Counted from the first letter of the whole stretch, positions 2,367 through 18,880 are shown. The stretch: DNA of 63,995 bases, filler included, from Octopus bimaculoides (GCF_001194135.2; 6 parts of 6 records of this genome joined end to end with filler, not necessarily neighbours in it); one strand, 5' to 3'. A program made the numbers and translations. The notes: a model not told the origin generated them from the sequence alone.

Positions 2367-3217
2367 CATTTTTCTATCTAAATTTATATGCTGCTAAATA
2401 CCTATATATATACTAGAAACATTGTTTATGCATAGGTATTAAAATATGTGTGTGTCTAGATACGTGTATGTATATATATATGTATTTGTGTGTGTGAGAG
2501 AAAAATATTAATATTTATTCTTCTAGATTATGTTTCCAATATATTTTGATATTTAAACTGTGCACACATTTTACTTTCATCAACCACAGGATATCAAGCA
2601 TTATTCGTGACATTAGCATTCATATATCATCATGAATGTATTATAGATATGTCTATCTATACATATATATACATGCGTGTATCTATATGTGCACACACAC
2701 ACATACACGCGCGCATTTATAATACGTAACTTGTGATCTATCCATCAACTGTTTATATATTGCAATTGTTATATATATATATATATATAGCAGTATGCAC
2801 GTACGATGCAGTAAAACCATTGATTGGCTTCTTGCACTATTCTGAGCGCATTCTTCCAATAAAGTTAACGTTCCTCTACGTTTGTGCACGCGCACACATA
2901 CACACTCGCGCGCGCCTTGTCCCTTTCTTTTATTCTTTATAACTTTCAAATTTGGGTGTCGACCTCTCCCCTCTCTTTTCCTTCTCTCTCAAATTTTGTT
3001 TGTGGTTATTTGTTTCTTTTGCAGTCTTCCATAATCCAGGGGCTAGCTTTTCACAGTCTCTCCACGGCCCTAACCCCAAACTCCATCCATTACAACGATT
3101 TTGTGTACTTGTCAATATTATTGGAATTTCCGTTAGACCCTTTTGAACAAATACATGCCAGCTATAGCCTCCTGTCCATTATTTCAGACCTTATATATTT
3201 AAATCTATATTATCCCA

Positions 3218-3337
3218 GGTAAATTTTCAGATTAACACCCACACGATTTTCACTAGGGTGTTAGGGTTAGTTTTAGGGTTACGGTTAGGGTTACAGAATT
3301 CCGTCCCTAACCTTAACCGTAATCGTAACCCTAAATC

Positions 3338-3369
<32 letters not shown>

Positions 3370-3428
3370 CTAACCCTAACCCTAAAACCCTAGTGAAAAT
3401 CGTGCGGGTGTTAATCTGAAAATTTACC
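3218..3428. mobile_element. MITE with GG termini, 8-bp TSD and internal inverted telomeric repeats (Merlin-like, or MULE)
   Basis: TIRs match at 51/53 nt starting GGTAAATTTTCAGATTAACACCC. Exact TSD TTATCCCA at 3210-3217 and 3429-3436. TTAGGG units lie on the left arm and CCCTAA units on the right. Confidence 0.9.
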
Positions 3429-3529
3429 TTATCCCATGTATTATTCCCTTTTTAACGACATAAAATTTGTGCGATTCTCAAGAAGACATTAAACTGCTAT
3501 TTCTAGCGATTTTAGTGACTTATTTAAGG

Positions 3530-3686
3530 TAGTGGTTCTCAACCTTTTTAATCCAGATCCAAAACCTGGTTTTTTTTTTAGGGGCTGCACCAAAAGAAGT
3601 AAAAACACAAGGGAAAGAAATTTTTTTATCAATAAAGACCGTCGAGGGCCGCACGTGGCCCTGGGAGCCGCTGTTGAGAACCGTTG
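3530..3686. mobile_element. hAT (Charlie-like) MITE
   Basis: TAGTGGTTCTCAAC ... GTTGAGAACCGTTG termini and a subterminal GGGCCGCACGTGGCCC palindrome. No TSD recognised. Confidence 0.7.
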
Positions 3687-4469: not shown

Positions 4470-4612
4470 CAGTGTGCAACTGGTATTTATTTTGTCCACA
4501 CTAAAAAGCGAAGCCAACTTCGATGGAATTTGAAACCATAGTCTGAAGGCTGACGAAATATTGCTAAGTATTTTACTTGACATGCTAACAGTTCTGCCAG
4601 CTCGCCACCTTG
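4470..4612 (-). mobile_element. tRNA-derived SINE family A, decayed
   Basis: Contains GGAATTTGAA and ends in TTCTGCCAGCTCGCC, the reverse complement of the family A head. Confidence 0.75.
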
Positions 4613-4679: not shown

Positions 4680-4884
4680 TCTTGAAGTACGTGGAACAAA
4701 TAGGGGCTGCAATAAGGGTAGAGCCCTTGTAGAAAATAGCACTGCTTGGAACTGCTCAAATATTCCGGATGGTGCTCGAAAAATAAGGGGTGTTACCTTA
4801 GTTCACTGGTTGTGAACAGCTGACACTGTAGTACATCTCCAGTGTTAGAAGCTGTGCAAAGACAATAATAATAATAATAATAAT
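4680..4884 (+). mobile_element. R4/Dong-type LINE 3' end with (AAT)n tail
   Basis: Encodes KIALLGTAQIFRMVLEK*, the same C-terminal motif as the copies at 33.8-37.4 kb. It is flanked by (AAT)n on both sides. Confidence 0.7.
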
Positions 4885-5140
4885 CCTTTCTACTATAGGC
4901 ACAAGGTCTGAAATTTAGGGGAAGGGGGATAGTTGATTACATCAACCCCAGTATTTGGCTGGTATTTAATTTATCAACCTGAAAGGATGAAAGGCAAAGT
5001 CAACTTCAGCGGAATTTGAACTCAGAACATAGAGGCAGATAAAATACCGCTGAGCATATTGTCCAGCAATGTTTAGTGGTATTTTGTCAGTCTTTATGTT
5101 CTGAGTTCAAATTCTGCTGAAATTGCTGGCCTTGTGCCAA
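4885..5140. mobile_element. two family A SINE fragments head-to-head (minus 4885-5070, plus 5072-5140)
   Basis: GGAATTTGAACTCAGAAC is followed by its reverse complement GTTCTGAGTTCAAATTC. Confidence 0.8.
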
Positions 5141-5957
5141 AATTATTATTATATTTACCACAAAGACAGCTGATGAAGGAGATGTTACAGAGAAGAGAAA
5201 ATGAAAATGATGAAGCTTATGCAAAAATCGTTTATGAAGAAAACAAGCAACAAATTAATAAATGTCAGGCATGGAATTCATAAGGCAATCCATTTAGTAT
5301 TCTAACAGTAGGGAAGGCCAGTTAAAGAACCCTACAGATTCAGGATTACTCTGATTTCAAAGTACTCTCTCCAAGTAATCATACCCTGGCCTACACAAAT
5401 AGAGAGTAAACCTATTTATTTGTCTGGGCCATACTTGTCACTCTCACCCAACTTTCAGCAAATTCACTGGAACAGAATACCTCACCTCTCTCTCTCTCCA
5501 ACCTCTTCAACTTCTTCCGTCTCTCCAAGGTCCATCCGAAGAGGCTGATGACATTTTGACCAAAGTGGAAAGTCTCCCTCTCTCATTGAATCCTTTTACT
5601 CTTGTCTACCAAACAATCCCTTTTGCTATTGGCCACCAAATGGGCAAATTTATTTGGTGGACATCCTCATGATGGATTACCAATGGTTGGATTTATCCCA
5701 TATGCAGCAACAGCTTTTTTGATACATTTCCAAAAGTTGGTAATGCTTTGACATTGAGTGATTGCGAAGCAGTATTCTTTATTGTGCACATCTCAGAAAG
5801 GTTGAAGTTCCTACCTTGCTTATGGTGTTTATTCCAAACAGCATCCCATTCTGTATAAATGCCGGAGATGCATTCCTGGACGTTGTCCACAGTGTTCAAG
5901 CTGAAAGACTTCCAGAACTGAATGTTCAGCTGATCTTCATTGATGAAGCCTGATTGC

Positions 5958-6095
5958 TTGACCTGCTAGAAATAGCAGCCTATATATCTCAAGTTTCATG
6001 CTACTATTTTAAAGTAAATGGAGACAGTCATGGTTGGAATGCTTTTAGTCTATATCTGCTTCTCAGGGTTGATCTGGGGTTAAACTAAACACAGG
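5958..6095 (+). mobile_element. short interspersed repeat, working family F
   Basis: GACCTGCTAGAAATAGCAGCC head and TCATGGTTGGAATGC..GATCTGGGGTTAAAC tail, shared with 46985-47220 and 58555-58738. Confidence 0.7.
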
Positions 6096-6682
6096 ACCAG
6101 GCTATTTTGGAAAGAGAAGGGATTGGGGGTTGGGTAGTAAGTCAAAGCCATTGATATTTCGTTCCTTCACTTCAAAATTTAACAAATTCCACACGAGAAA
6201 TTTAAACCCGAGAACATCAAAATATGGCACTAAATAGTGTAACACCTTTAATATTAGCCCCCCCCCCACACCCACCTACCAACTACTTCCCAGGTTGACT
6301 CACAACATGTGGTTAATATGGTCTACATTGTCTCTACAGTCTTGTTCAGTTAGGATGTTGGTGTTGATGATGATGATGATGATGGATGTTAAACATCATT
6401 ATTGATTAGGATGATGACGATGACGACAATGGTGATGACAGTGATGGCGGCAATGATAATAATGATAAATGAAGATATTTGATTAGGATCATGATGATGA
6501 TGATAACGATAATGAGGATGATGATGCTGATATAAATAATGATGAAGGTTGGTGATAATTGATTGTGATGGCAATGGTGGTGGTGGTGGAGAGGAAGTGA
6601 TGATGTTGATGATGATGAAAGTATCAATGTCAGTGGAACCATCTTACCATAAGGGTTCATGTTAGCTCACTCTATCACACGT

Positions 6683-6717
<35 letters not shown>

Positions 6718-8032
6718 AACGCACACAACTCCAGCTAAATTCTCTTTAGATGTGAGTAAATGTTAGCCACCACTGCTGCCACCACCCATTAACCACAACC
6801 ATCTCCTCCACCATCACCATTCCCTATGCTCTCTCAATGCTACTATCATTTCCACCACCACCACCATCATCATCACTACCACTGTTAACATCATCATTAT
6901 CCATATCTTCACCACTGCCACCACAACCACCATCATTTTCGGTCTCTATGAGTTGCTCCAATTCAAATCTAGCTTTCTTCACCATTGTTTTGACATCCCC
7001 TTTTCTATGCCTGCATGGGTCAGACAGTTTTCTCAGGTAGATTTTCTATGGCCAGATGCTTTTCCTGTCACCAACCCTGACTTGAAGTTTAAAGGATACT
7101 GTATTTTCTGGCATACAAGTCGATATACAGCATAGAACATGAAGTGCAAACATTCAAACATTGTCTCTATCTTCCAAATCCTGCTGCTTTTCATATAGAA
7201 TTTTGGTCCTCCAAAGGTCATCTTGGTGTGTAAGTTGACCTACCTTTTTTGGGGTCTGGAAAATGTAAGAGGAAAAACACTTGAGTATAAAACAGTGTAG
7301 TGTCCCACCCATGCCAGCATGGAAGGCGAACGTTAAACGATGATGATGTGTAAATTTGTATTGTTGGACTATGAAATACTTATAGAATACTTAAATTCTT
7401 TCTCCTTTTACTATTTCCTCCCAAACCAACACCACCACTACCCCCCCCCCCACACCTGCACTATCTATCTCTGCTATGATTACTACTACAACTGCTGCTG
7501 CTGCTGCTGCTGTTCTGTGAAGCTGTATGGTATAAAAACTGTTCTCATTTTCTTTGGCAAGGTACACAACTCTGTCTACCTTTAGCAGAGATGAACTTTG
7601 AGAATTCAGTCTGATCCTGTACTGCAGTCGAAGTGAAGTAGTGACAGATATTCATTGACTCACCAAACATTCTCTGTTGGTGAAACAAATAACAGCGAGG
7701 AAGTTGCATAAGCCGTTGCAATGTAGAGCAACTTGTTAGTGTTTCTTTTTCATGCTGTATACCCAGAGGTCAGTTTGGTGGAGTCCAATACATCTAAAAA
7801 GTTAAATACTCCACAGGTGGGACTTGAAGACATCATTACAAGCTTTGGATTTACTCAACTGTTATTTAAGAATTTCAAGAAATTTCAGCATCGACCATTT
7901 TATCTTTTTATTTAAGCATAATTGTACCCACAACTTCATTATCCAATGTGTCGTTTCCCTTTTTGAGATAATAGTGTGTAATTTGAGAGGTTTTAGTGCT
8001 ATTTCTAGCAGGGCGAGTAGCTACATAGAAAA

Positions 8033-8225
8033 GTTGGTTGTGTGGTTAAGAAGTTTTCTTCCCCAACATATGGGTTCAGTCACACTGCATGGTACCTTGG
8101 GCATTATGGCCCTGGGATGACTAAAGCCTTGTGAGTGGATTTGGTAGATGGAGGCCCTGGAGTGACCAAAGCCTTGTGAGTGGATTTGGTAGATGGAAAT
8201 TGAAAGAAGCCCATCTCGTATATAT
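8033..8225 (+). mobile_element. family B SINE 5' part with an internal 45-bp tandem duplication
   Basis: GGCCCTGG....GAC.AAAGCCTTGTGAGTGGATTTGGTAGATGGA occurs twice in tandem. Confidence 0.8.
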
Positions 8226-8289
8226 ATATTGTGTGGTTGTTGTAAATGATTGTCGGTCATATGAGCAGTGTCATTCATTCACAATATTC

Positions 8290-9141: not shown

Positions 9142-9260
9142 TGGCCCTATAGGCTCTTTCAGGGTTGATAAATTAAGTACCAGTTACGTACTGGGGCTGA
9201 TACATCGACTGGGCCCCTCCCCCAAGATTTCGGGCCTTGTACCTAGAGTAGAAAAGAATA
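9142..9260 (+). mobile_element. family A SINE 3' half
   Basis: GATAAATTAAGTACCAGTTACGTACTGGGG..GGGCCTTGTACCTAGAGTAGAAAAG, also present at 51880-52010. Confidence 0.85.
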
Positions 9261-9368
9261 TATGCTGTATGCTTTATTTCTGTGACAATGGCACTAGTGA
9301 GGTCACCAAGTAAGTTGCAAGACAAAGAAAGGACGAGGAAAGGCCATTTTGACTGAATGAGAGGGTAT

Positions 9369-9607: not shown

Positions 9608-10337
9608 GTGAGTACAGGGAAGAATATAACCTGTGGGTCATTTCATAGGAATGTCTGAGGAGAGTGATGAATGGTTAAAGATTGGGCTGGAGATGAATGC
9701 AGTGAGTGACAAAAGAGGGCGAAAGTGTGGTTGATGGGAAATACCAGAATGGCAGTGGGGAGGTGAGATAGATGTGTTAAAGAATTAGATATTTTCACCA
9801 CAGATGCAATGTGGTGGTGGGTTACAGGATTTGAACTGCTGGCCTTTAGCCATCTATGTTCTCAAGAACATCGGCATCGGTGTTCAAACGTGTAGACAAG
9901 CACAGTCTGCTGTACCAAAAGTCTAGTTGGTGGTAGTAGTGCATCCGTTGTAGAGCTGTCTGTCGGTGCTGACTGAAATAGTAACTTTATTGATTCTTCT
10001 GTCACTAGTTGATGTACTACTGCATTTCACACATCAACTTGATGTTGGTGTTGCTGCTGCTGCTGCTGGAGATGGGTAGATAGATGTTAGGTCAGGTCAC
10101 CTTGCTCACTCATGCTAGCCTGTTGCACCCTCCAAATAGTCTGTTGGAACAATAGAAAGAGAAAGAGAGAGAGAGAGAGAAGGCCCATTGACAACAGCCC
10201 AAGTCAGAAATATTGTTTGCAGCCTTTATTTTACTCCAGATCAATCTTGATTGAGCAGAGTTATGATTAAAGATGTTTTTTCAGCTGTGACTCATCCTGT
10301 CTTTTTTTTTTTAATATACCTAGAACTACATCGTCTC

Positions 10338-10612
10338 TTTTATCTTTATCTTTTTAGTTGCTTCAGTTGCTGGACTGTGGCCATGCTGGGGCACTGCCTC
10401 AGAGTTATTTGTACAGATTGATTTCAGTACATATTTTAAAAATCTGGTACTTATTTCATCAATCTTTTTTGTTGAACTGCTAAGTTACAGTGATGTAAAC
10501 AAACCAACACCGGTTCTCAAACCACGTGTTTGTAAAGAGACAAATGCAAAAACACACAGACACACGACAGGCTTCCACACAGTTTCTGCCTACCAAATTC
10601 GCTCACAAGGCA
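10338..10612 (-). mobile_element. family B SINE, 5'-truncated
   Basis: Contains GGCCATGCTGGGGCACTGCC, GTAAACAAACCAACACCGG and CAGTTTCTGCCTACCAAATTCGCTCACAAGGC. Confidence 0.8.
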
Positions 10613-10629
10613 TTATAATATTATAGCCA

Positions 10630-11070
10630 CAATATTTATGGCTATGTGGTTAAGCAGCTTGCTTTGCAACCATGTGGTTTCAGGTTCAGTCCAACTGCAT
10701 GGCACCTTGGGTAAACGTCTTCTTTTACAGCCCCAAACTGACCATTGCCTTGTAAGTGAATTTCATAGAAGCCCTTCATGTACACACACAGAGCGAGAGG
10801 TTTGTGTGTCTTTGGGCCTGTATTTGTCACTACCATCCGTCACTGCTTGACAACTGATGTTGCTTTGTTTACATCATCCTCATAACATAGTGAGTTTTGA
10901 AAAGAGACCAATAGAATTAGTACCAGAATAAATAAAAAAACCAAAAAAAACAAAAAAACAAAAAAAAAAAAACCTCAAACGTACCGGGGTTGGTTTGCTC
11001 CACAAACTCTTGAAAGGCAGTGCTCCAGCATGGCCACATTTCAATGACTGAAATGAGTAAAAGATAAAAA
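10630..11070 (+). mobile_element. family B SINE, near full length
   Basis: tRNA-like head TGGCTATGTGGTTAAG..GGTTCAGTCC and tail GCTCCAGCATGGCC..TGACTGAAATGAGTAAAAG. Confidence 0.85.
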
Positions 11071-12996
11071 ATGTTTGAATTCTTTTCTTTTGATGTGAAC
11101 TTGGGTTGGTTGAGTCTTTAAATTTATACATTTAAGGAATAGTTGCTGCTGGTATTTTTCTAACCAGGGGGACACTGCCTTCCCACGCAACCATAAATAT
11201 GTACAGAGTATATTGTTATACTTATTATTTTGACNNNNNNNNNNNNNNNNNNNNNNNNNNNNNNNNNNNNNNNNNNNNNNNNNNNNNNNNNNNNNNNNNN
11301 NNNNNNNNNNNNNNNNNNNNNNNNNNNNNNNNNNNNNNNGTGGGTGATGGGGGCTTTTGTTATTGCTTATTGTACTTAGACTGGATAATGTACTGATAGT
11401 GAATGAAGGTGGAGGATTTGTAGTGACAGATGAAACTGTATGATGTGTGTGTGTGTGTGTGTGTGTGTGTGATTGATAAAGTAAAAATTATGGTGTGTGT
11501 GTGAATAGATGGTAGGATGTGACTTGAGATATTTGGCTGTTATTTTTAGCAGTTCATGTAGAGGCTTCCTCATTGGCGTGTCTGTTTGTGTGTGTGTGTG
11601 TAAAAGAGAAAGATGTGTATGTGCAATGGTATTGTTGCTTGGTCCTGGATGTAGAGGACCTGCAGTGATTTGGCTGTTTGTAAGATGCTTTTGTGAAAGG
11701 CTCGAAAGCTATGGCAGGAACTTGAAAGACAGGTTGAATCTAGCTACCAGCCGATAACCCCTGGTAAAGTTGAAGGAGCCACATTAACCCCTGGTTAAAT
11801 CCACTTAGTGACAAGATAGCCATTAACTATTTAAAAAAAATCCCTATTGAATTCAATAATGTATGCATCAAGGCAAGCGCAATGATATGAAAATGTGATG
11901 TAACTAGACAAGACCTGCTTCAAAATAGTTGTGACCATTTTCAAAGAGTAAAGGGTAGAAAAGCACAGAGTTAATATAAAAAGTATAAATGACCCTACAC
12001 CATTTATTTCATGGTTTGACTGTCCAGGTATGGTTACGTGGTTTAAAATAGGTAAGAGATAAATCTCTCTCTCTCCTTAAGGACGGAATGTTGGGCTCGG
12101 TCAAATATTTGCTGTGTGTATCTGTTGTCTGGAACACACCCTGTGGAAATCTGTTCCCAACATTTCAAGGCAATCCCTCCAATGGACACTCCCCAGGGAG
12201 GTACATGCATGGCAGATGAAAAGCAACAGACTGTCAAGTGACTACACTCGGGAACAAGAACAATCCATTGCTGAAGATTGAGGTAAATGGAGATCTCTTG
12301 TTGGTTCCCTATGCTCCGTATGGTGTTTAAGGATTAAGAAATATTTTCTGTTCTTGAGAAGTGAACCCAACAAAGTACAGTCCAAGTACTTGCAAGAAAA
12401 TTGCTGTTATGGATTTGAACTCCAGCCCTTAAATCATTTCGTTTCTGTGAGGAATGTTTGGGTCATGACTTTTAAATTTTAAGATTGGTCAGAGTTGTTG
12501 GAAAGTTAAGAGCAAACTTCTCAGCATTTAACATTTGCATATCACATAGCACTTCCTTGGTGTGGAATGGCGTTGAATGGAGATTGACCCAACACTGGGT
12601 CATCTCTATCCTTATTAAACCTCATTATCAACATCATCTTCATCACCATGACTGACATGCATCATTGTCATCTAAAAGGAAAGCATCAAATTATTCACAA
12701 TTCCCTATTTTTCTTGTATTTTGAAGGGGAAAAAAATCTATGTAAAAAGGAGGGAAAATATATTTTCAATGCAAAAAGTATAAAAGCAAAGTATAAATGT
12801 GGAGTATCAGATTTTTTTCTTTTTTTACCCCTTTCCCTTGTCCCCTATCTGCTGCTACCATTACAAGTCAGGGTATATGGTGCCCTGACCCCTTGTACTT
12901 TTAAATAAAATTTAGTTCTATTTTATGTTGGCAGTGGTGGTGGTGGTGGGGGGGGGGTAGATCAGTTTACTTCTTCCTCATTATTCTACATGCATC

Positions 12997-14653: not shown

Positions 14654-14978
14654 GTCATCGTTTAATGTCCGTTTTCCATGCTGGCATGAGTTGGACGGTT
14701 TGACCGGTGACTAGCAAGCCAGGGGGCCACACCAGGCTCCAATCTGATCTGGCAGAGTTTCTACAGCTGGATGCCCTTCCTAATGCCAACCGCTCTGAGA
14801 GTGCAGTGGGTACTTTTTATGTGCCATTGGCATGGGAGCCAGTCAGGCGGTGCTTGCAATGACCACGTTCAGATGGTGCTTTTTACGTGCCACCGTTATG
14901 AGAGCCAGTCAAGTGGCACTGGCATCGGCCATGTTTGGATGGTGCTTTCTACGTGCCACCAGCACGGGCATCATCCAG
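14623..14978 (-). mobile_element. family D retroposon with (GAT)n tail and about 66-bp internal tandem units
   Basis: (CAT)n, then GTTTAATGTCCGTTTTCCATGCTGGCATG..TGGATGCCCTTCCTAATGCCAAC, then three GTGCTTTTTACGTGCCACC-type units. Confidence 0.8.
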
Positions 14979-15074
14979 TCAGGTGGCAACGATAGTAGTA
15001 GTAGTATGTTATAGTGTGTTGTTTAGCCCCAGGTCATCCTTGATTGAGAGGACCAACAATCAAAAGCATGCTGT

Positions 15075-17068: not shown

Positions 17069-17306
17069 AGATGTGAGTGGTCCTGCAGTCCACGTCTAAT
17101 TAACTGTAGTAAAATAAAAAAATAAATAAATAAAATTAAAAAATAAAAAAGTAAACAAAAATGAAATGAAAGCAAAAATAAAAACTTGAAAAGCAAAGAG
17201 AATCAATCATCAGTTTGATGATGATGATGATGATGTTGGTTATAATTAATTTGATGACATGGAGTTTTTTTTTACACATTGTGTGCTCGTTATGTTTGTG
17301 AGTGTG

Positions 17307-17365
<59 letters not shown>

Positions 17366-17562
17366 TGAATATTGTTTTTCTAATCTACCTTATACCAGCT
17401 CAAATTAGCTAGTAGTAATAGTGGTGGTGGCGGTGATGGCAGCACCAGCAGCTGATGGTGGTGATGGTGGTGATGGTGGTGGTGATATTTCGNNNNNNNN
17501 NNNNNNNNNNNNNNNNNNNNNNNNNNNNNNNNNNNNNNNTGCTCGTTATGTTTGTGAGTGTG

Positions 17563-17621
<59 letters not shown>

Positions 17622-18119
17622 TGAATATTGTTTTTCTAATCTACCTTATACCAGCTCAAATTAGCTAGTAGTAATAGTGGTGGTGGCGGTGATGGCAGCA
17701 CCAGCAGCTGATGGTGGTGATGGTGGTGATGGTGGTGGTGATATTTCGTGTGCACCTCAGTAGAATTGTTGCCTTCAACAAATGGCCTGCTCGACCTAAG
17801 TAAAAACATAAACGCAAGGCAATGTAATGTGGTACAAATCTTTGACAGCCTCCAAACAGCAGGTACCCCTCTATAAAGCGGTGAGTGTTTCATTTTGTAA
17901 TTAGTAAAAGCTCTGGACGAAATATTTTGCTACATTTAGTTGTGTCTTTCTTACATTCTCGGTTCAAACCCTGCCAAAGAGGGAACCAAACTTTACGTTC
18001 TGTTTCTTGAAGGTTAATGAAAGTTATTTGTAATGTAAAGGGGTTGAGGCTTGCTTTTGTAGTCCTCAAATTTTTTGCCCCTCCCCTCCAATTACTAATG
18101 GAACGACAAAACAAATTTA

Positions 18120-18480
18120 TCTTTTACTTGTTTCAGTCATTGGATTGTGGCCATGCTGGGGCACCGCTATGAAGGATTTCGTCAACCAGATGAGCCCCAG
18201 TACTTATTTGTTTAATACTTATTTTGTCTGTCTCACTTTACTGAATCACTACATTATGAGGACATAAACAAACAAACACCCACTGTTAAGTGGTGGTGGA
18301 GGGACAAACAAATACAGATGTGCACTTGCGTACACACACACACGTGATGGCTTTCTTTCAGTTTCCATCTACCACATTCATTCACAAGGCTTTGGTTGGC
18401 CCAGTGATATAGTTCACGACACTTGCCCAAGGTACCACACAGTAGGACTGAACCTAGAACTATGTGATTTGGAACCAAAC
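18120..18480 (-). mobile_element. family B SINE
   Basis: Runs from CTTTTACTTGTTTCAGTCATTGG through CCCAAGGTACCACACAGTAGGACTGAACC. Confidence 0.85.
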
Positions 18481-18717
18481 CTCATGCCACATAGCCTCCA
18501 CCAGTGCCTATAGATTCTGTCCCTACAATTCTTCTGTTTGCATTTTGGTTTTGGATGAAAATAAAAAGTTGAAAACAATCACAGTTTTGTTAAACATAAG
18601 TGCAGGAGTGGCTGTGTGGTAAGAAGTTTGCTTCACAACCATTTGGTTCCAGGTTCAATCCTACTCTATGGCATCTATATATATACATATATATATATAT
18701 ATATNNNNNNNNNNCCC

Positions 18718-18880
18718 TTCCTAACGTCAACCACTCCGAGAGTGTAGTGGGTGCTTTTACATGCTACTGGCACGAGGGCCAGTCAGGTGGTTCTGCCAAT
18801 GACCATGCTCAAAAGGTGTTTTTTACGTGCTACCTGCACGGGAGCCAGTCAGGTGGCACTGGTAACGACCACGTTCGAAT
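18718..18880 (-). mobile_element. family D retroposon fragment
   Basis: CCCTTCCTAACGTCAACCACTCCGAGAGTGTAGTGGGTGC plus two of the ~66-bp units. Confidence 0.8.

What the first reader, a model, noticed from the sequence alone, without database searches (positions are those of the whole stretch)
3210..3436. MITE that carries a miniature telomere-fusion-like palindrome
Seen: a 211-bp element with 53-nt TIRs (51/53), GG termini, an exact 8-bp TSD (TTATCCCA), and an interior of TTAGGG units facing CCCTAA units, which is the geometry of an end-to-end telomere fusion. Known: GG termini with 8-9-bp TSDs typify Merlin/IS1016 (MULEs are also compatible), and TTAGGG is the usual molluscan telomere repeat. 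Inference: a DNA-transposon family may be dispersing interstitial telomeric sequence and telomere-protein binding sites. It could confound telomere FISH and fusion-site calls, and its transcript would form a long hairpin.
Basis: partly seen in the sequence, partly recalled or inferred. Interest (0 to 1): 0.72.

Follow-up and report, generated by a model that had tools for sequence, protein, structure and literature searches.

The report
Octopus hairpin transposon with telomere-like repeats
A 211-base non-coding jumping-gene remnant in an octopus genome folds back on itself, so its two runs of degenerate telomere-type repeats face each other; this is an ordinary small DNA transposon, probably of the Merlin type, and not a relic of a chromosome-end fusion.

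Summary
Window 3218-3428 is a 211-bp element with GG...CC termini, 51/53 matching inverted ends and an exact 8-bp target-site duplication (TTATCCCA). Its interior has about 6 TTAGGG-like units facing about 14 CCCTAA-like units.

I reached 154 kb of Octopus DNA through Merlin transposase genes. That sample holds a second family member in O. sinensis: L001:161-3272, with the same terminal 38 nt (34/38) and its own 8-bp duplication (AAAAAAAT). It is also a near-perfect palindrome, but it has no telomere-like repeats. The family is therefore mobile, and the head-to-head layout follows from the family's foldback build, not from a telomere fusion.

The Merlin assignment is supported but not proven:
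- GG ends and an 8-bp duplication.
- The first 15 nt match the ends of two transposase-encoding Merlins at 12/15 and 10/15.
- Three octopus Merlin families checked here also have GG ends and 8-bp duplications, but different end sequences. The autonomous partner was not found.

Only this one copy pairs the family's ends with telomere-like repeats. A similar repeat core sits in another O. bimaculoides palindrome. Family-wide spread of telomere-protein sites is unproven.

Verdict: a new member of a known kind, of modest interest.

The parts
3210..3217 (.). Left copy of the 8-bp target-site duplication, TTATCCCA
   Evidence: (family D4): exact direct repeat of 3429-3436, directly abutting the element.
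3218..3259 (+). Left terminal inverted repeat proper (42 nt): GGTAAATTTTCAGATTAACACCCACACGATTTTCACTAGGGT
   Evidence: Positions 1-38 are 34/38 identical to both ends of the O. sinensis foldback L001:161-3272. The first 15 nt match Merlin ends at 12/15 (L008/L009) and 10/15 (L011).
3260..3293 (+). Left-arm degenerate telomere-type array, about 6 TTAGGG-like units: GTTAGGGTTAGTTTTAGGGTTACGGTTAGGGTTA
   Evidence: 33/37 to a perfect array. 33/34 identical to L004:5931-5964 in O. bimaculoides.
3294..3304 (.). Centre of the palindrome, the unpaired turn (CAGAATTCCGT, contains GAATTC)
3305..3386 (+). Right-arm degenerate array, about 14 CCCTAA-like units. It is longer than the left arm, so the hairpin is asymmetric.
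   Evidence: 78/88 to a perfect array; two runs of 3 perfect units.
3387..3428 (-). Right terminal inverted repeat proper (42 nt), the reverse complement of the left one with 1 mismatch
3429..3436 (.). Right copy of the 8-bp target-site duplication, TTATCCCA

Best explanation
Window 3218-3428 is a non-autonomous, foldback-type miniature DNA transposon (MITE) inserted in an Octopus genome. It most likely belongs to the Merlin/IS1595 superfamily.

How it is proposed to work (inferred, not shown):
- A Merlin DDE transposase encoded elsewhere in the genome binds the roughly 40-nt ends.
- The binding site is probably the inner ...ACACCCNCACGATTTTCAC... half, because the sister element reiterates that motif subterminally.
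- The transposase cuts the element out and reinserts it, with staggered cuts 8 bp apart.
- Repair of those cuts gives the TTATCCCA duplication.

The element has no coding capacity.

Its interior is a short degenerate (TTAGGG)n-type tandem array lying just inside one end. The family's members are built as near-perfect palindromes, one arm copied in inverted orientation, most likely by template switching or hairpin repair. The array is therefore present twice, head to head.

Later slippage made the arms unequal, about 6 versus about 14 units. The telomere-like sequence is cargo or a subterminal repeat, not a functional telomere and not a fusion relic.
For: Shown here:
- Exact 8-bp duplication, GG...CC ends and 51/53 matching inverted ends.
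- A second family member, L001:161-3272 in O. sinensis, with ends 34/38 identical on both sides, its own 8-bp duplication AAAAAAAT, and arms 95.5% complementary over about 1.43 kb.
- That element carries poly-A plus three ~120-bp tandem repeats where the MITE has telomere-like units, and each of those repeats reiterates the inner half of the end sequence.
- The host is an Octopus-like genome: a window SINE-like repeat hits O. sinensis and O. vulgaris loci and none of the non-octopus loci.
- Octopus Merlins have the same hallmarks:
  - the 8.7-kb element in L001/L002/L003 ends GGCGATG...GCC, with duplications GCAAATCT, GAAACTTT and CAAGGCTT;
  - the compact 1.6-kb element in L015 ends GGCACTG..., with duplication AAATTCAC.
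- Terminal motif: MITE GGTAAATTTTCAGAT against the transposase-encoding Merlin L008/L009 GGTACTTCTTCAGAT is 12/15. After the obligatory GG it is 10/13, binomial P about 2e-4, with five Merlin end families compared. Against L011 it is 10/15.

From the literature:
- Merlin is defined by TIRs of 24-462 bp, a conserved 5'-GG and 8-9-bp duplications. O. bimaculoides has 191 Merlin proteins, the most named among protostomes (PMC8101967).
- Tandem repeats inside MITEs and foldback elements are well known (PMC5615363).
Against: - No autonomous element with these exact ends was found. The three octopus Merlin families sampled have different end sequences (4-6/15 for the one compared position by position).
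- Only two family members were seen, in about 173 kb. Genome-wide copy number is unknown.
- GG ends, an 8-bp duplication and subterminal short tandem repeats also fit animal MULEs (PMC5225508).
- The 12/15 terminal match is short and was noticed after the fact.
- No empty orthologous site could be examined.
- The origin of the TTAGGG-type array (slippage, capture or telomerase) is not resolved.
Confidence: 0.62

Rival explanations
1. It is the same kind of foldback MITE, but it belongs to the Mutator-like (MULE/Foldback) superfamily and is mobilised by a MULE transposase rather than a Merlin one.
For: Animal MULEs make 8-9-bp duplications. Their ends are built from a short terminal motif plus subterminal short tandem repeats, and non-autonomous derivatives have variable repeat numbers (PMC5225508). 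From my own knowledge, Drosophila FB elements are grouped with MULEs. The MITE and its sister are both foldbacks with subterminal tandem repeats.
Against: The terminal 15 nt match Merlin ends at 12/15 and 10/15. A conserved 5'-GG is a stated Merlin hallmark. Merlin is unusually abundant in Octopus, and all Merlin copies checked here make exactly 8-bp duplications. The sister foldback carries fragments of a Merlin element, though that may be incidental. No MULE data from Octopus were obtained.
Confidence: 0.15
2. One reading: a transposon family whose cargo is true telomeric sequence, which spreads interstitial telomeric sites and telomere-protein binding sites through the genome. It possibly arose from a telomere-capped or telomere-fused DNA end.
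For: About 125 of the 211 bp is TTAGGG-type sequence at about 89% identity to a perfect array. TTAGGG is the only experimentally shown cephalopod telomere motif (PMC13218726 and PMC6160780). The family-specific end stops at ...CACTAGGG, so it runs straight into a telomere unit. The same variant-bearing 34-nt core (33/34) lies at the centre of another palindromic repeat in O. bimaculoides, L004:5565-6294, so the module exists in more than one place.
Against: The only other element with these ends has no telomere-like repeats. At most 3 perfect units occur in a row, and the left arm has none adjacent. The foldback layout explains the facing arrays without any fusion. The shared variant pattern with L004 shows the array was inherited by copying, not freshly added by telomerase in this copy. 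There are no data on protein binding. One other array in the sample (L005:7399-7488) is one-directional and lacks these ends.
Confidence: 0.12
3. It is not a mobile element. It is a chance or artefactual palindrome, for example an assembly or library hairpin artefact or a local inverted duplication of a microsatellite.
For: The window is a draft assembly with N gaps, and one clear gap-flanking duplication artefact lies at 17284-17748. The interior is low-complexity sequence.
Against: The exact 8-bp direct repeat abuts the ends. The 42-nt non-repetitive ends have a homologue, on both sides of another TSD-flanked element, in an independent assembly of another species. The nearest N runs are about 1.9 kb (1277-1286) and 7.8 kb (11235) away. 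No shuffle reproduced the ends.
Confidence: 0.03

Closest known systems
Merlin/IS1595-superfamily DNA transposons and their MITE derivatives (Feschotte 2004, as summarised in PMC8101967)
   Same: 5'-GG termini, an 8-bp target-site duplication, end length within the 24-462-bp range, and a non-coding short derivative. The host genus is rich in Merlin transposases. The terminal motif GGTAnnTnTnCAGA is shared with two transposase-encoding Merlins.
   Different: No transposase-encoding partner with these ends was found. The whole element is a hairpin. The interior is a telomere-type hexamer array, which I did not find reported for Merlin in the searched library.
Foldback (FB-type) elements, e.g. 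Drosophila FB and Tetris (cited in PMC5615363); MULEs with subterminal tandem repeats such as Aedes Muta1 (PMC5225508)
   Same: The element is essentially two long inverted arms made of a terminal motif plus short tandem repeats. Repeat number varies between arms and between copies. The duplication is 8-9 bp. The 3.1-kb sister element L001:161-3272 has exactly this build.
   Different: The terminal sequence resembles Merlin ends, not known FB or MULE ends. It is much smaller (211 bp), and the repeat unit is the telomere hexamer.
Molluscan MITE-like elements that carry internal tandem or satellite repeats (bivalve 'pearl'-type elements; general point in PMC5615363; specific names from my own knowledge)
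   Same: A small non-autonomous mollusc element whose core is a tandem array that it can move around the genome.
   Different: Those carry satellite monomers of about 150-170 bp in one orientation. Several were later reassigned to Helitron-like elements without TIRs or an 8-bp duplication. Here the array is a hexamer and is mirrored.
Interstitial telomeric sequences from chromosome fusion (head-to-head arrays) or from telomerase-mediated break repair
   Same: TTAGGG-type units in the chromosome interior. The head-to-head orientation looks like a fusion point.
   Different: Fusion relics and repair insertions are not bounded by 42-nt inverted ends and an 8-bp duplication. This one is about 125 bp and degenerate, and it sits inside a mobile-element frame whose sister copy has the same palindromic shape without telomere repeats.
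Telomere-repeat-bearing retroelements (endonuclease-deficient Penelope-like elements; PMC4522978)
   Same: A mobile element physically linked to short species-type telomere repeats.
   Different: Those are reverse-transcriptase elements with repeats at the 3' end, and they reside at chromosome ends. This is a cut-and-paste-type element with internal repeats at an internal locus.

Membership tests
Merlin/IS1595 superfamily | Conserved 5'-GG at both termini | tested here: met
   GGTAAATT...AATTTACC. Feature as stated in PMC8101967. Also seen on all five Merlin elements whose ends I defined.
Merlin/IS1595 superfamily | 8- or 9-bp target-site duplication | tested here: met
   TTATCCCA, 8/8. The sister element has AAAAAAAT.
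Merlin/IS1595 superfamily | Terminal inverted repeats of 24-462 bp | tested here: met
   42 nt family-specific, 51/53 in total.
Merlin/IS1595 superfamily | Ends shared with an autonomous element encoding a DDE_Tnp_IS1595 transposase | tested here: inconclusive
   Three octopus Merlin families sampled (L001-3, L004/5/15, L016/17) have other end sequences. Two non-octopus Merlins share the first 15 nt at 12/15 and 10/15. A genome-wide search was not possible with these collections.
MITE (miniature inverted-repeat transposable element) | Short (under about 800 bp), no coding capacity, TIRs and a TSD | tested here: met
   211 bp. The longest ORF lying wholly inside the element is 40 codons and is made of repeat-derived residues. 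No protein relatives were found.
MITE (miniature inverted-repeat transposable element) | Many dispersed copies with different TSDs | tested here: inconclusive
   Two family members with different TSDs in about 173 kb of Octopus sequence. Only the window copy is miniature. No hits in metagenome, prokaryote-genome or viral contig scans, which hold no octopus DNA.
Foldback-type element | The element consists almost wholly of two inverted arms containing tandem repeats | tested here: met
   The sister element's arms are 95.5% complementary over about 1.43 kb, with three ~120-bp repeats per arm.
MULE superfamily | 8-10-bp TSD, long TIRs (often over 100 bp) with subterminal tandem repeats, and an MuDR-type transposase in the partner | tested here: inconclusive
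   TSD length and subterminal repeats fit (PMC5225508). The partner transposase is unknown. The terminal motif resembles Merlin ends instead.
hAT superfamily | 8-bp TSD with short TIRs beginning YARNG (CAG/TAG; my own knowledge) | tested here: not met
   The TSD length fits, but the termini are GGTAA, and no register gives CAG...CTG ends.
PIF/Harbinger (Tourist-like MITE) | 3-bp TWA duplication next to GG-starting ends (my own knowledge) | tested here: not met
   The three bases flanking the element are CCA on the left and TTA on the right, so they are not a duplication. The 8-bp repeat is the only consistent TSD.
Telomere-fusion relic / interstitial telomeric site | Head-to-head telomere arrays not bounded by transposon ends, at a fusion or repair point | tested here: not met
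   The arrays lie inside 42-nt TIRs plus a TSD. The palindromic sister element has no telomere units.

The most novel reading that the evidence does not exclude
The element may have been born from a broken or excised half-transposon whose free end (...CACTAGGG) was healed by telomerase. After replication, the two sister ends would have fused telomere to telomere. That would create a ready-made two-ended palindromic transposon that Merlin transposase could reinsert. In this reading the element is a mobile, literal miniature telomere fusion, and its descendants seed telomere-protein sites inside chromosomes.
Probability: 0.05. Interest if true: 0.75.

Novelty: new member of a known kind. Interest (0 to 1): 0.3.

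Why it matters
This gives a concrete, TSD-defined example of a Merlin-like foldback family in cephalopods, whose DNA transposons are barely curated. It also shows that short head-to-head TTAGGG tracts in octopus assemblies can be transposon interiors.

That is a practical warning for anyone calling interstitial telomeric sites, chromosome-fusion points or scaffold-end telomeres from motif scans in cephalopod genomes.

If many copies carried the array, the family could matter for telomere-protein distribution and for small-RNA production from hairpin transcripts. Nothing here shows that.

Tried and rejected
1. Exact scans for the 23-nt terminus and for the second end block in metagenome, prokaryote-genome and viral contigs gave 0 hits. 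These collections evidently hold no octopus DNA, so the result says nothing about copy number.

2. A search of the protein database with the 40-residue ORF that reads through the element found no candidates. Random ORFs of this genome are not in that database.

3. A search with a 4,844-residue concatenate of the window's non-repetitive ORFs, meant to find an annotated exon and reach orthologous loci for an empty-site test, gave no hit. The empty-site test was therefore impossible.

5. Rfam and tRNA scans of the window found nothing.

6. The ENA and Logan Merlin hits (L006-L014) turned out not to be octopus. They were still useful as complete Merlin elements for comparing ends.

7. UniRef-only octopus Merlins P0010 and P0039 are not on record as genes.

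8. Alternative TSD registers (3-bp TWA, TA, TTAA) and hAT-type ends do not fit.

9. A local alignment hints that L004:5852-6034 could be an old degenerate copy of the same MITE, including weak end similarity. I do not rely on it, because the score is inflated by the repeat units and nhmmer finds no end sequence there.

10. Literature searches for a MITE or DNA transposon carrying telomeric repeats found none in the held library. That library is incomplete, and Repbase and Dfam could not be consulted.

Full report
**1. What is there**

- TTATCCCA occurs at 3210-3217 and again at 3429-3436.
- Between the two copies lie 211 bases (3218-3428) that begin GGTAAATTTTCAGATTAACACCC and end with its exact reverse complement.
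- That 23-mer occurs only at these two places in the window, and none of 200 dinucleotide-preserving shuffles gave a match.
- The ends match 51/53. The tool reports 62 nt at 94%.
- Inside, the left arm holds about 6 TTAGGG-like units (33/37 to a perfect array). The right arm holds about 14 CCCTAA-like units (78/88).
- The longest perfect run is three units, and the left arm never has two perfect units side by side.
- The arms meet at CAGAATTCCGT.
- As a single strand the element folds into one long hairpin: -66.3 kcal/mol as DNA and -110.7 as RNA, z about -15, with 0 of 200 shuffles folding as well.

**2. Host and surroundings**

The window is a draft eukaryotic assembly.
- It is rich in microsatellites and has N gaps.
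- It has no tRNA or Rfam hits, and no ORF matches any database protein.
- A SINE-like repeat from the window (10321-10860) gives 43 blastn hits in loci from Octopus sinensis and O. vulgaris, and none in loci from other organisms.

With the homologous element described below, this places the window in an Octopus-like genome. TTAGGG is the only experimentally determined cephalopod telomere motif (PMC13218726 and PMC6160780). No other copy of the element lies in the window.

**3. Reaching related sequence**

The DNA collections hold no octopus sequence, and four exact scans found nothing. Protein searches with the ORF through the element and with a concatenate of window ORFs also failed.

The way in came from the literature.
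- PMC8101967 states that Merlin elements have TIRs of 24-462 bp, a conserved 5'-GG and 8-9-bp duplications.
- It also reports 191 Merlin proteins in O. bimaculoides.
- I took one of those proteins (KOF79200.1) from its supplement and used it for the last protein search.
- I then fetched the DNA around octopus Merlin genes: L001-L005 and L015-L017, 154 kb from O. bimaculoides, O. sinensis and O. vulgaris.

**4. A second family member**

In L001 (O. sinensis chromosome CM016860.1) the MITE's first 38 nt match at 34/38, once forward at 161-198 and once inverted at 3235-3272 (nhmmer E about 3e-13).
- These are the two ends of a 3,112-bp element flanked by AAAAAAAT on both sides, an 8-bp duplication different from the window's.
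- The element is itself a near-perfect palindrome, with arms 95.5% complementary over about 1.43 kb.
- Directly inside each end it has a poly-A tract and three ~120-bp tandem repeats, not telomere-like units.
- Each of those repeats reiterates the inner half of the end sequence (...CACCCCC...CGGAATTTTCACAAG plus poly-A). That pattern is usual for transposase-binding sites.

Three conclusions follow.
- The end family is mobile: two insertions, two target duplications, two assemblies.
- Foldback architecture is a family trait, so the facing arrays in the window copy need no telomere-fusion explanation.
- Homology between the two elements stops at ...CACTA(G/A)G, about 40 nt in. The telomere-like array is therefore variable interior, not part of the conserved end.

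**5. Superfamily**

I defined the ends of the Merlin elements in the fetched loci.

| Element | Locus | Terminal sequence | 8-bp duplication |
|---|---|---|---|
| Octopus 8.7-kb Merlin (354-bp TIRs) | L001 / L002 / L003 | GGCGATGTTTCG... | GCAAATCT / GAAACTTT / CAAGGCTT |
| Octopus compact 1.6-kb Merlin | L015 | GGCACTGTCATGCC... | AAATTCAC |
| Non-octopus Merlin | L008 / L009 | GGTACTTCTTCAGATCGACG... | TTTATTAT / TTCTCTTC |
| Non-octopus Merlin (Logan contig spanning the whole element) | L011 | GGTACTTCTACAGAAC... | not defined |

GG ends with exactly 8-bp duplications therefore hold for every Merlin checked, including those in Octopus.

In fixed register the MITE's GGTAAATTTTCAGAT matches the L008/L009 end at 12/15.
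- After the obligatory GG this is 10/13, binomial P about 2e-4.
- Five Merlin end families were compared in all, four of them position by position.
- The MITE matches L011 at 10/15.
- It matches the L006 and L001 Merlin ends at only 4-6/15.

This is suggestive evidence that the MITE's terminus belongs to a GGTAnnTnTnCAGA subgroup of Merlin ends.

None of the three octopus Merlin families sampled has the MITE's ends, so the autonomous partner remains unidentified. The sister foldback does contain pieces of the compact octopus Merlin:
- 49 nt of its reading frame at 96% identity;
- its left end from the GGCA terminus onward.

These pieces come from a Merlin with different ends and may be nested debris.

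A MULE remains a fair rival. Animal MULEs also give 8-9-bp duplications and have subterminal short tandem repeats (PMC5225508). hAT-type and Harbinger-type parsings fail on the terminal bases and flanks.

**6. The telomere-like interior**

About 125 of the 211 bases are TTAGGG-type sequence at about 89% identity to a perfect array. The left-arm core is GTTAGGGTTAGTTTTAGGGTTACGGTTAGGGTTA, with its particular variant units.
- It recurs at 33/34 in O. bimaculoides at L004:5931-5964.
- There it again lies at the centre of a palindromic repeat, about 5565-6294, with different outer arms and no recognisable copy of the MITE's ends.
- The module is therefore inherited sequence that exists in more than one place, not a fresh telomerase product in this copy.
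- A third, one-directional array lies at L005:7399-7488.

The evidence shows that degenerate TTAGGG tracts sit inside octopus interspersed repeats, and that this MITE carries one. It does not show that the MITE family as such spreads them, because the only other member lacks them.

No data bear on protein binding. With at most three perfect units in a row, a single copy would not register in FISH. It could trip low-threshold motif scans.

**7. Mechanism**

Shown:
- inverted ends, target duplication and hairpin potential;
- a mobile sister element;
- the Merlin hallmarks, and Merlin transposase genes in the same genus.

Inferred:
- mobilisation in trans by a Merlin transposase that recognises the roughly 40-nt ends;
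- palindromic members arising by inverted copying of one arm;
- slippage making the arrays unequal.

Unknown:
- how the TTAGGG-type array first came to lie next to the end. Because the conserved end stops in ...CTAGGG, either slippage from that seed, capture of an existing tract, or telomerase healing of a broken end is conceivable. I give the last, most novel reading about 5%.

**8. Comparison and verdict**

The element works like, and probably is, a Merlin-derived foldback MITE. It differs from described Merlin MITEs in being almost entirely hairpin and in carrying telomere-type hexamers.

I found no report of such a combination in the held literature. Repbase and Dfam could not be checked, and the point rests on one copy.

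I rate it a new member of a known kind with modest interest. It is useful mainly as a caution for telomere and fusion-site calling in cephalopod assemblies, and as an entry point to an uncurated transposon family.

Noticed in passing
L001:161-3272 (O. sinensis CM016860.1): A 3.1-kb near-perfect palindromic (foldback) element with the MITE's ends and TSD AAAAAAAT. Each arm has three ~120-bp subterminal repeats that reiterate the inner end motif. A nested inner palindrome has CAGTGGTTTTCAACC-type ends around 1389-2073. The arms also carry fragments of the compact octopus Merlin, including 49 nt of its ORF.
   Followed up: partly
L001:4266-12990, L002 and L003 (O. sinensis x2, O. vulgaris): An unusually large (8.7 kb) Merlin element with 354-bp TIRs. 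It encodes an identical 305-aa transposase at three loci in two species, each with a different perfect 8-bp TSD. Copies are 99.2-99.6% identical, so it looks recently active.
   Followed up: partly
L015:9557-11179 and L005:9577-11720 (O. sinensis): A compact, roughly 1.6-kb Merlin (301-aa ORF, ends GGCACTGTCATGCC..., TSD AAATTCAC). The L005 copy is interrupted by a ~470-bp insert (about L005:10780-11250) that matches the long TIR of the 8.7-kb Merlin.
   Followed up: partly
L004:5565-6294 (O. bimaculoides LGKD02092233.1): A nested palindromic repeat whose centre is a head-to-head degenerate telomere-like array sharing a 33/34 core with the MITE interior. Its outer-arm sequence also occurs inverted at 4505-4563, directly abutting the right end of a Merlin copy. 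No TSD or GG ends could be defined.
   Followed up: partly
window 17284-17492 and 17540-17748: Two 209-bp stretches are 100% identical and flank the N run at 17493-17539. This is almost certainly a gap-closing or scaffolding duplication artefact, not biology.
   Followed up: no
window 3530-3685: About 100 bp downstream of the MITE lies a second small inverted-repeat structure (GGTTCTCAAC ... GTTGAGAACC, 129 nt apart). Its motif resembles the CAGTGGTT(C/T)TCAACC ends seen inside the L001 foldback. It is possibly another degraded MITE, but no TSD was identified.
   Followed up: no
window about 60-560, 8020-8280, 10320-11130, 18030-18500; also 14709-15000 and 18715-18875: Several copies of octopus SINE-like repeats are present, matching each other at 82-90% and hitting O. 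sinensis and O. vulgaris loci. A separate ~66-bp-unit repeat family (GGTGCTTTTTACGTGCCACCGGCA...) occurs at two places.
   Followed up: partly
L006:2070-9480 (ENA ERZ26222911, non-octopus): A Merlin element (ends GGCGCTCTTATCTTAGAAC..., TSD GGACTTTG) whose 3' part, including a 104-aa transposase fragment and the right end, is tandemly repeated four times at about 1.47-kb spacing.
   Followed up: no
window 4880-4985 and 9156-9261: A 107-bp inverted repeat pair at 78.5% identity, 4.2 kb apart. It is probably two old copies of another interspersed repeat.
   Followed up: no
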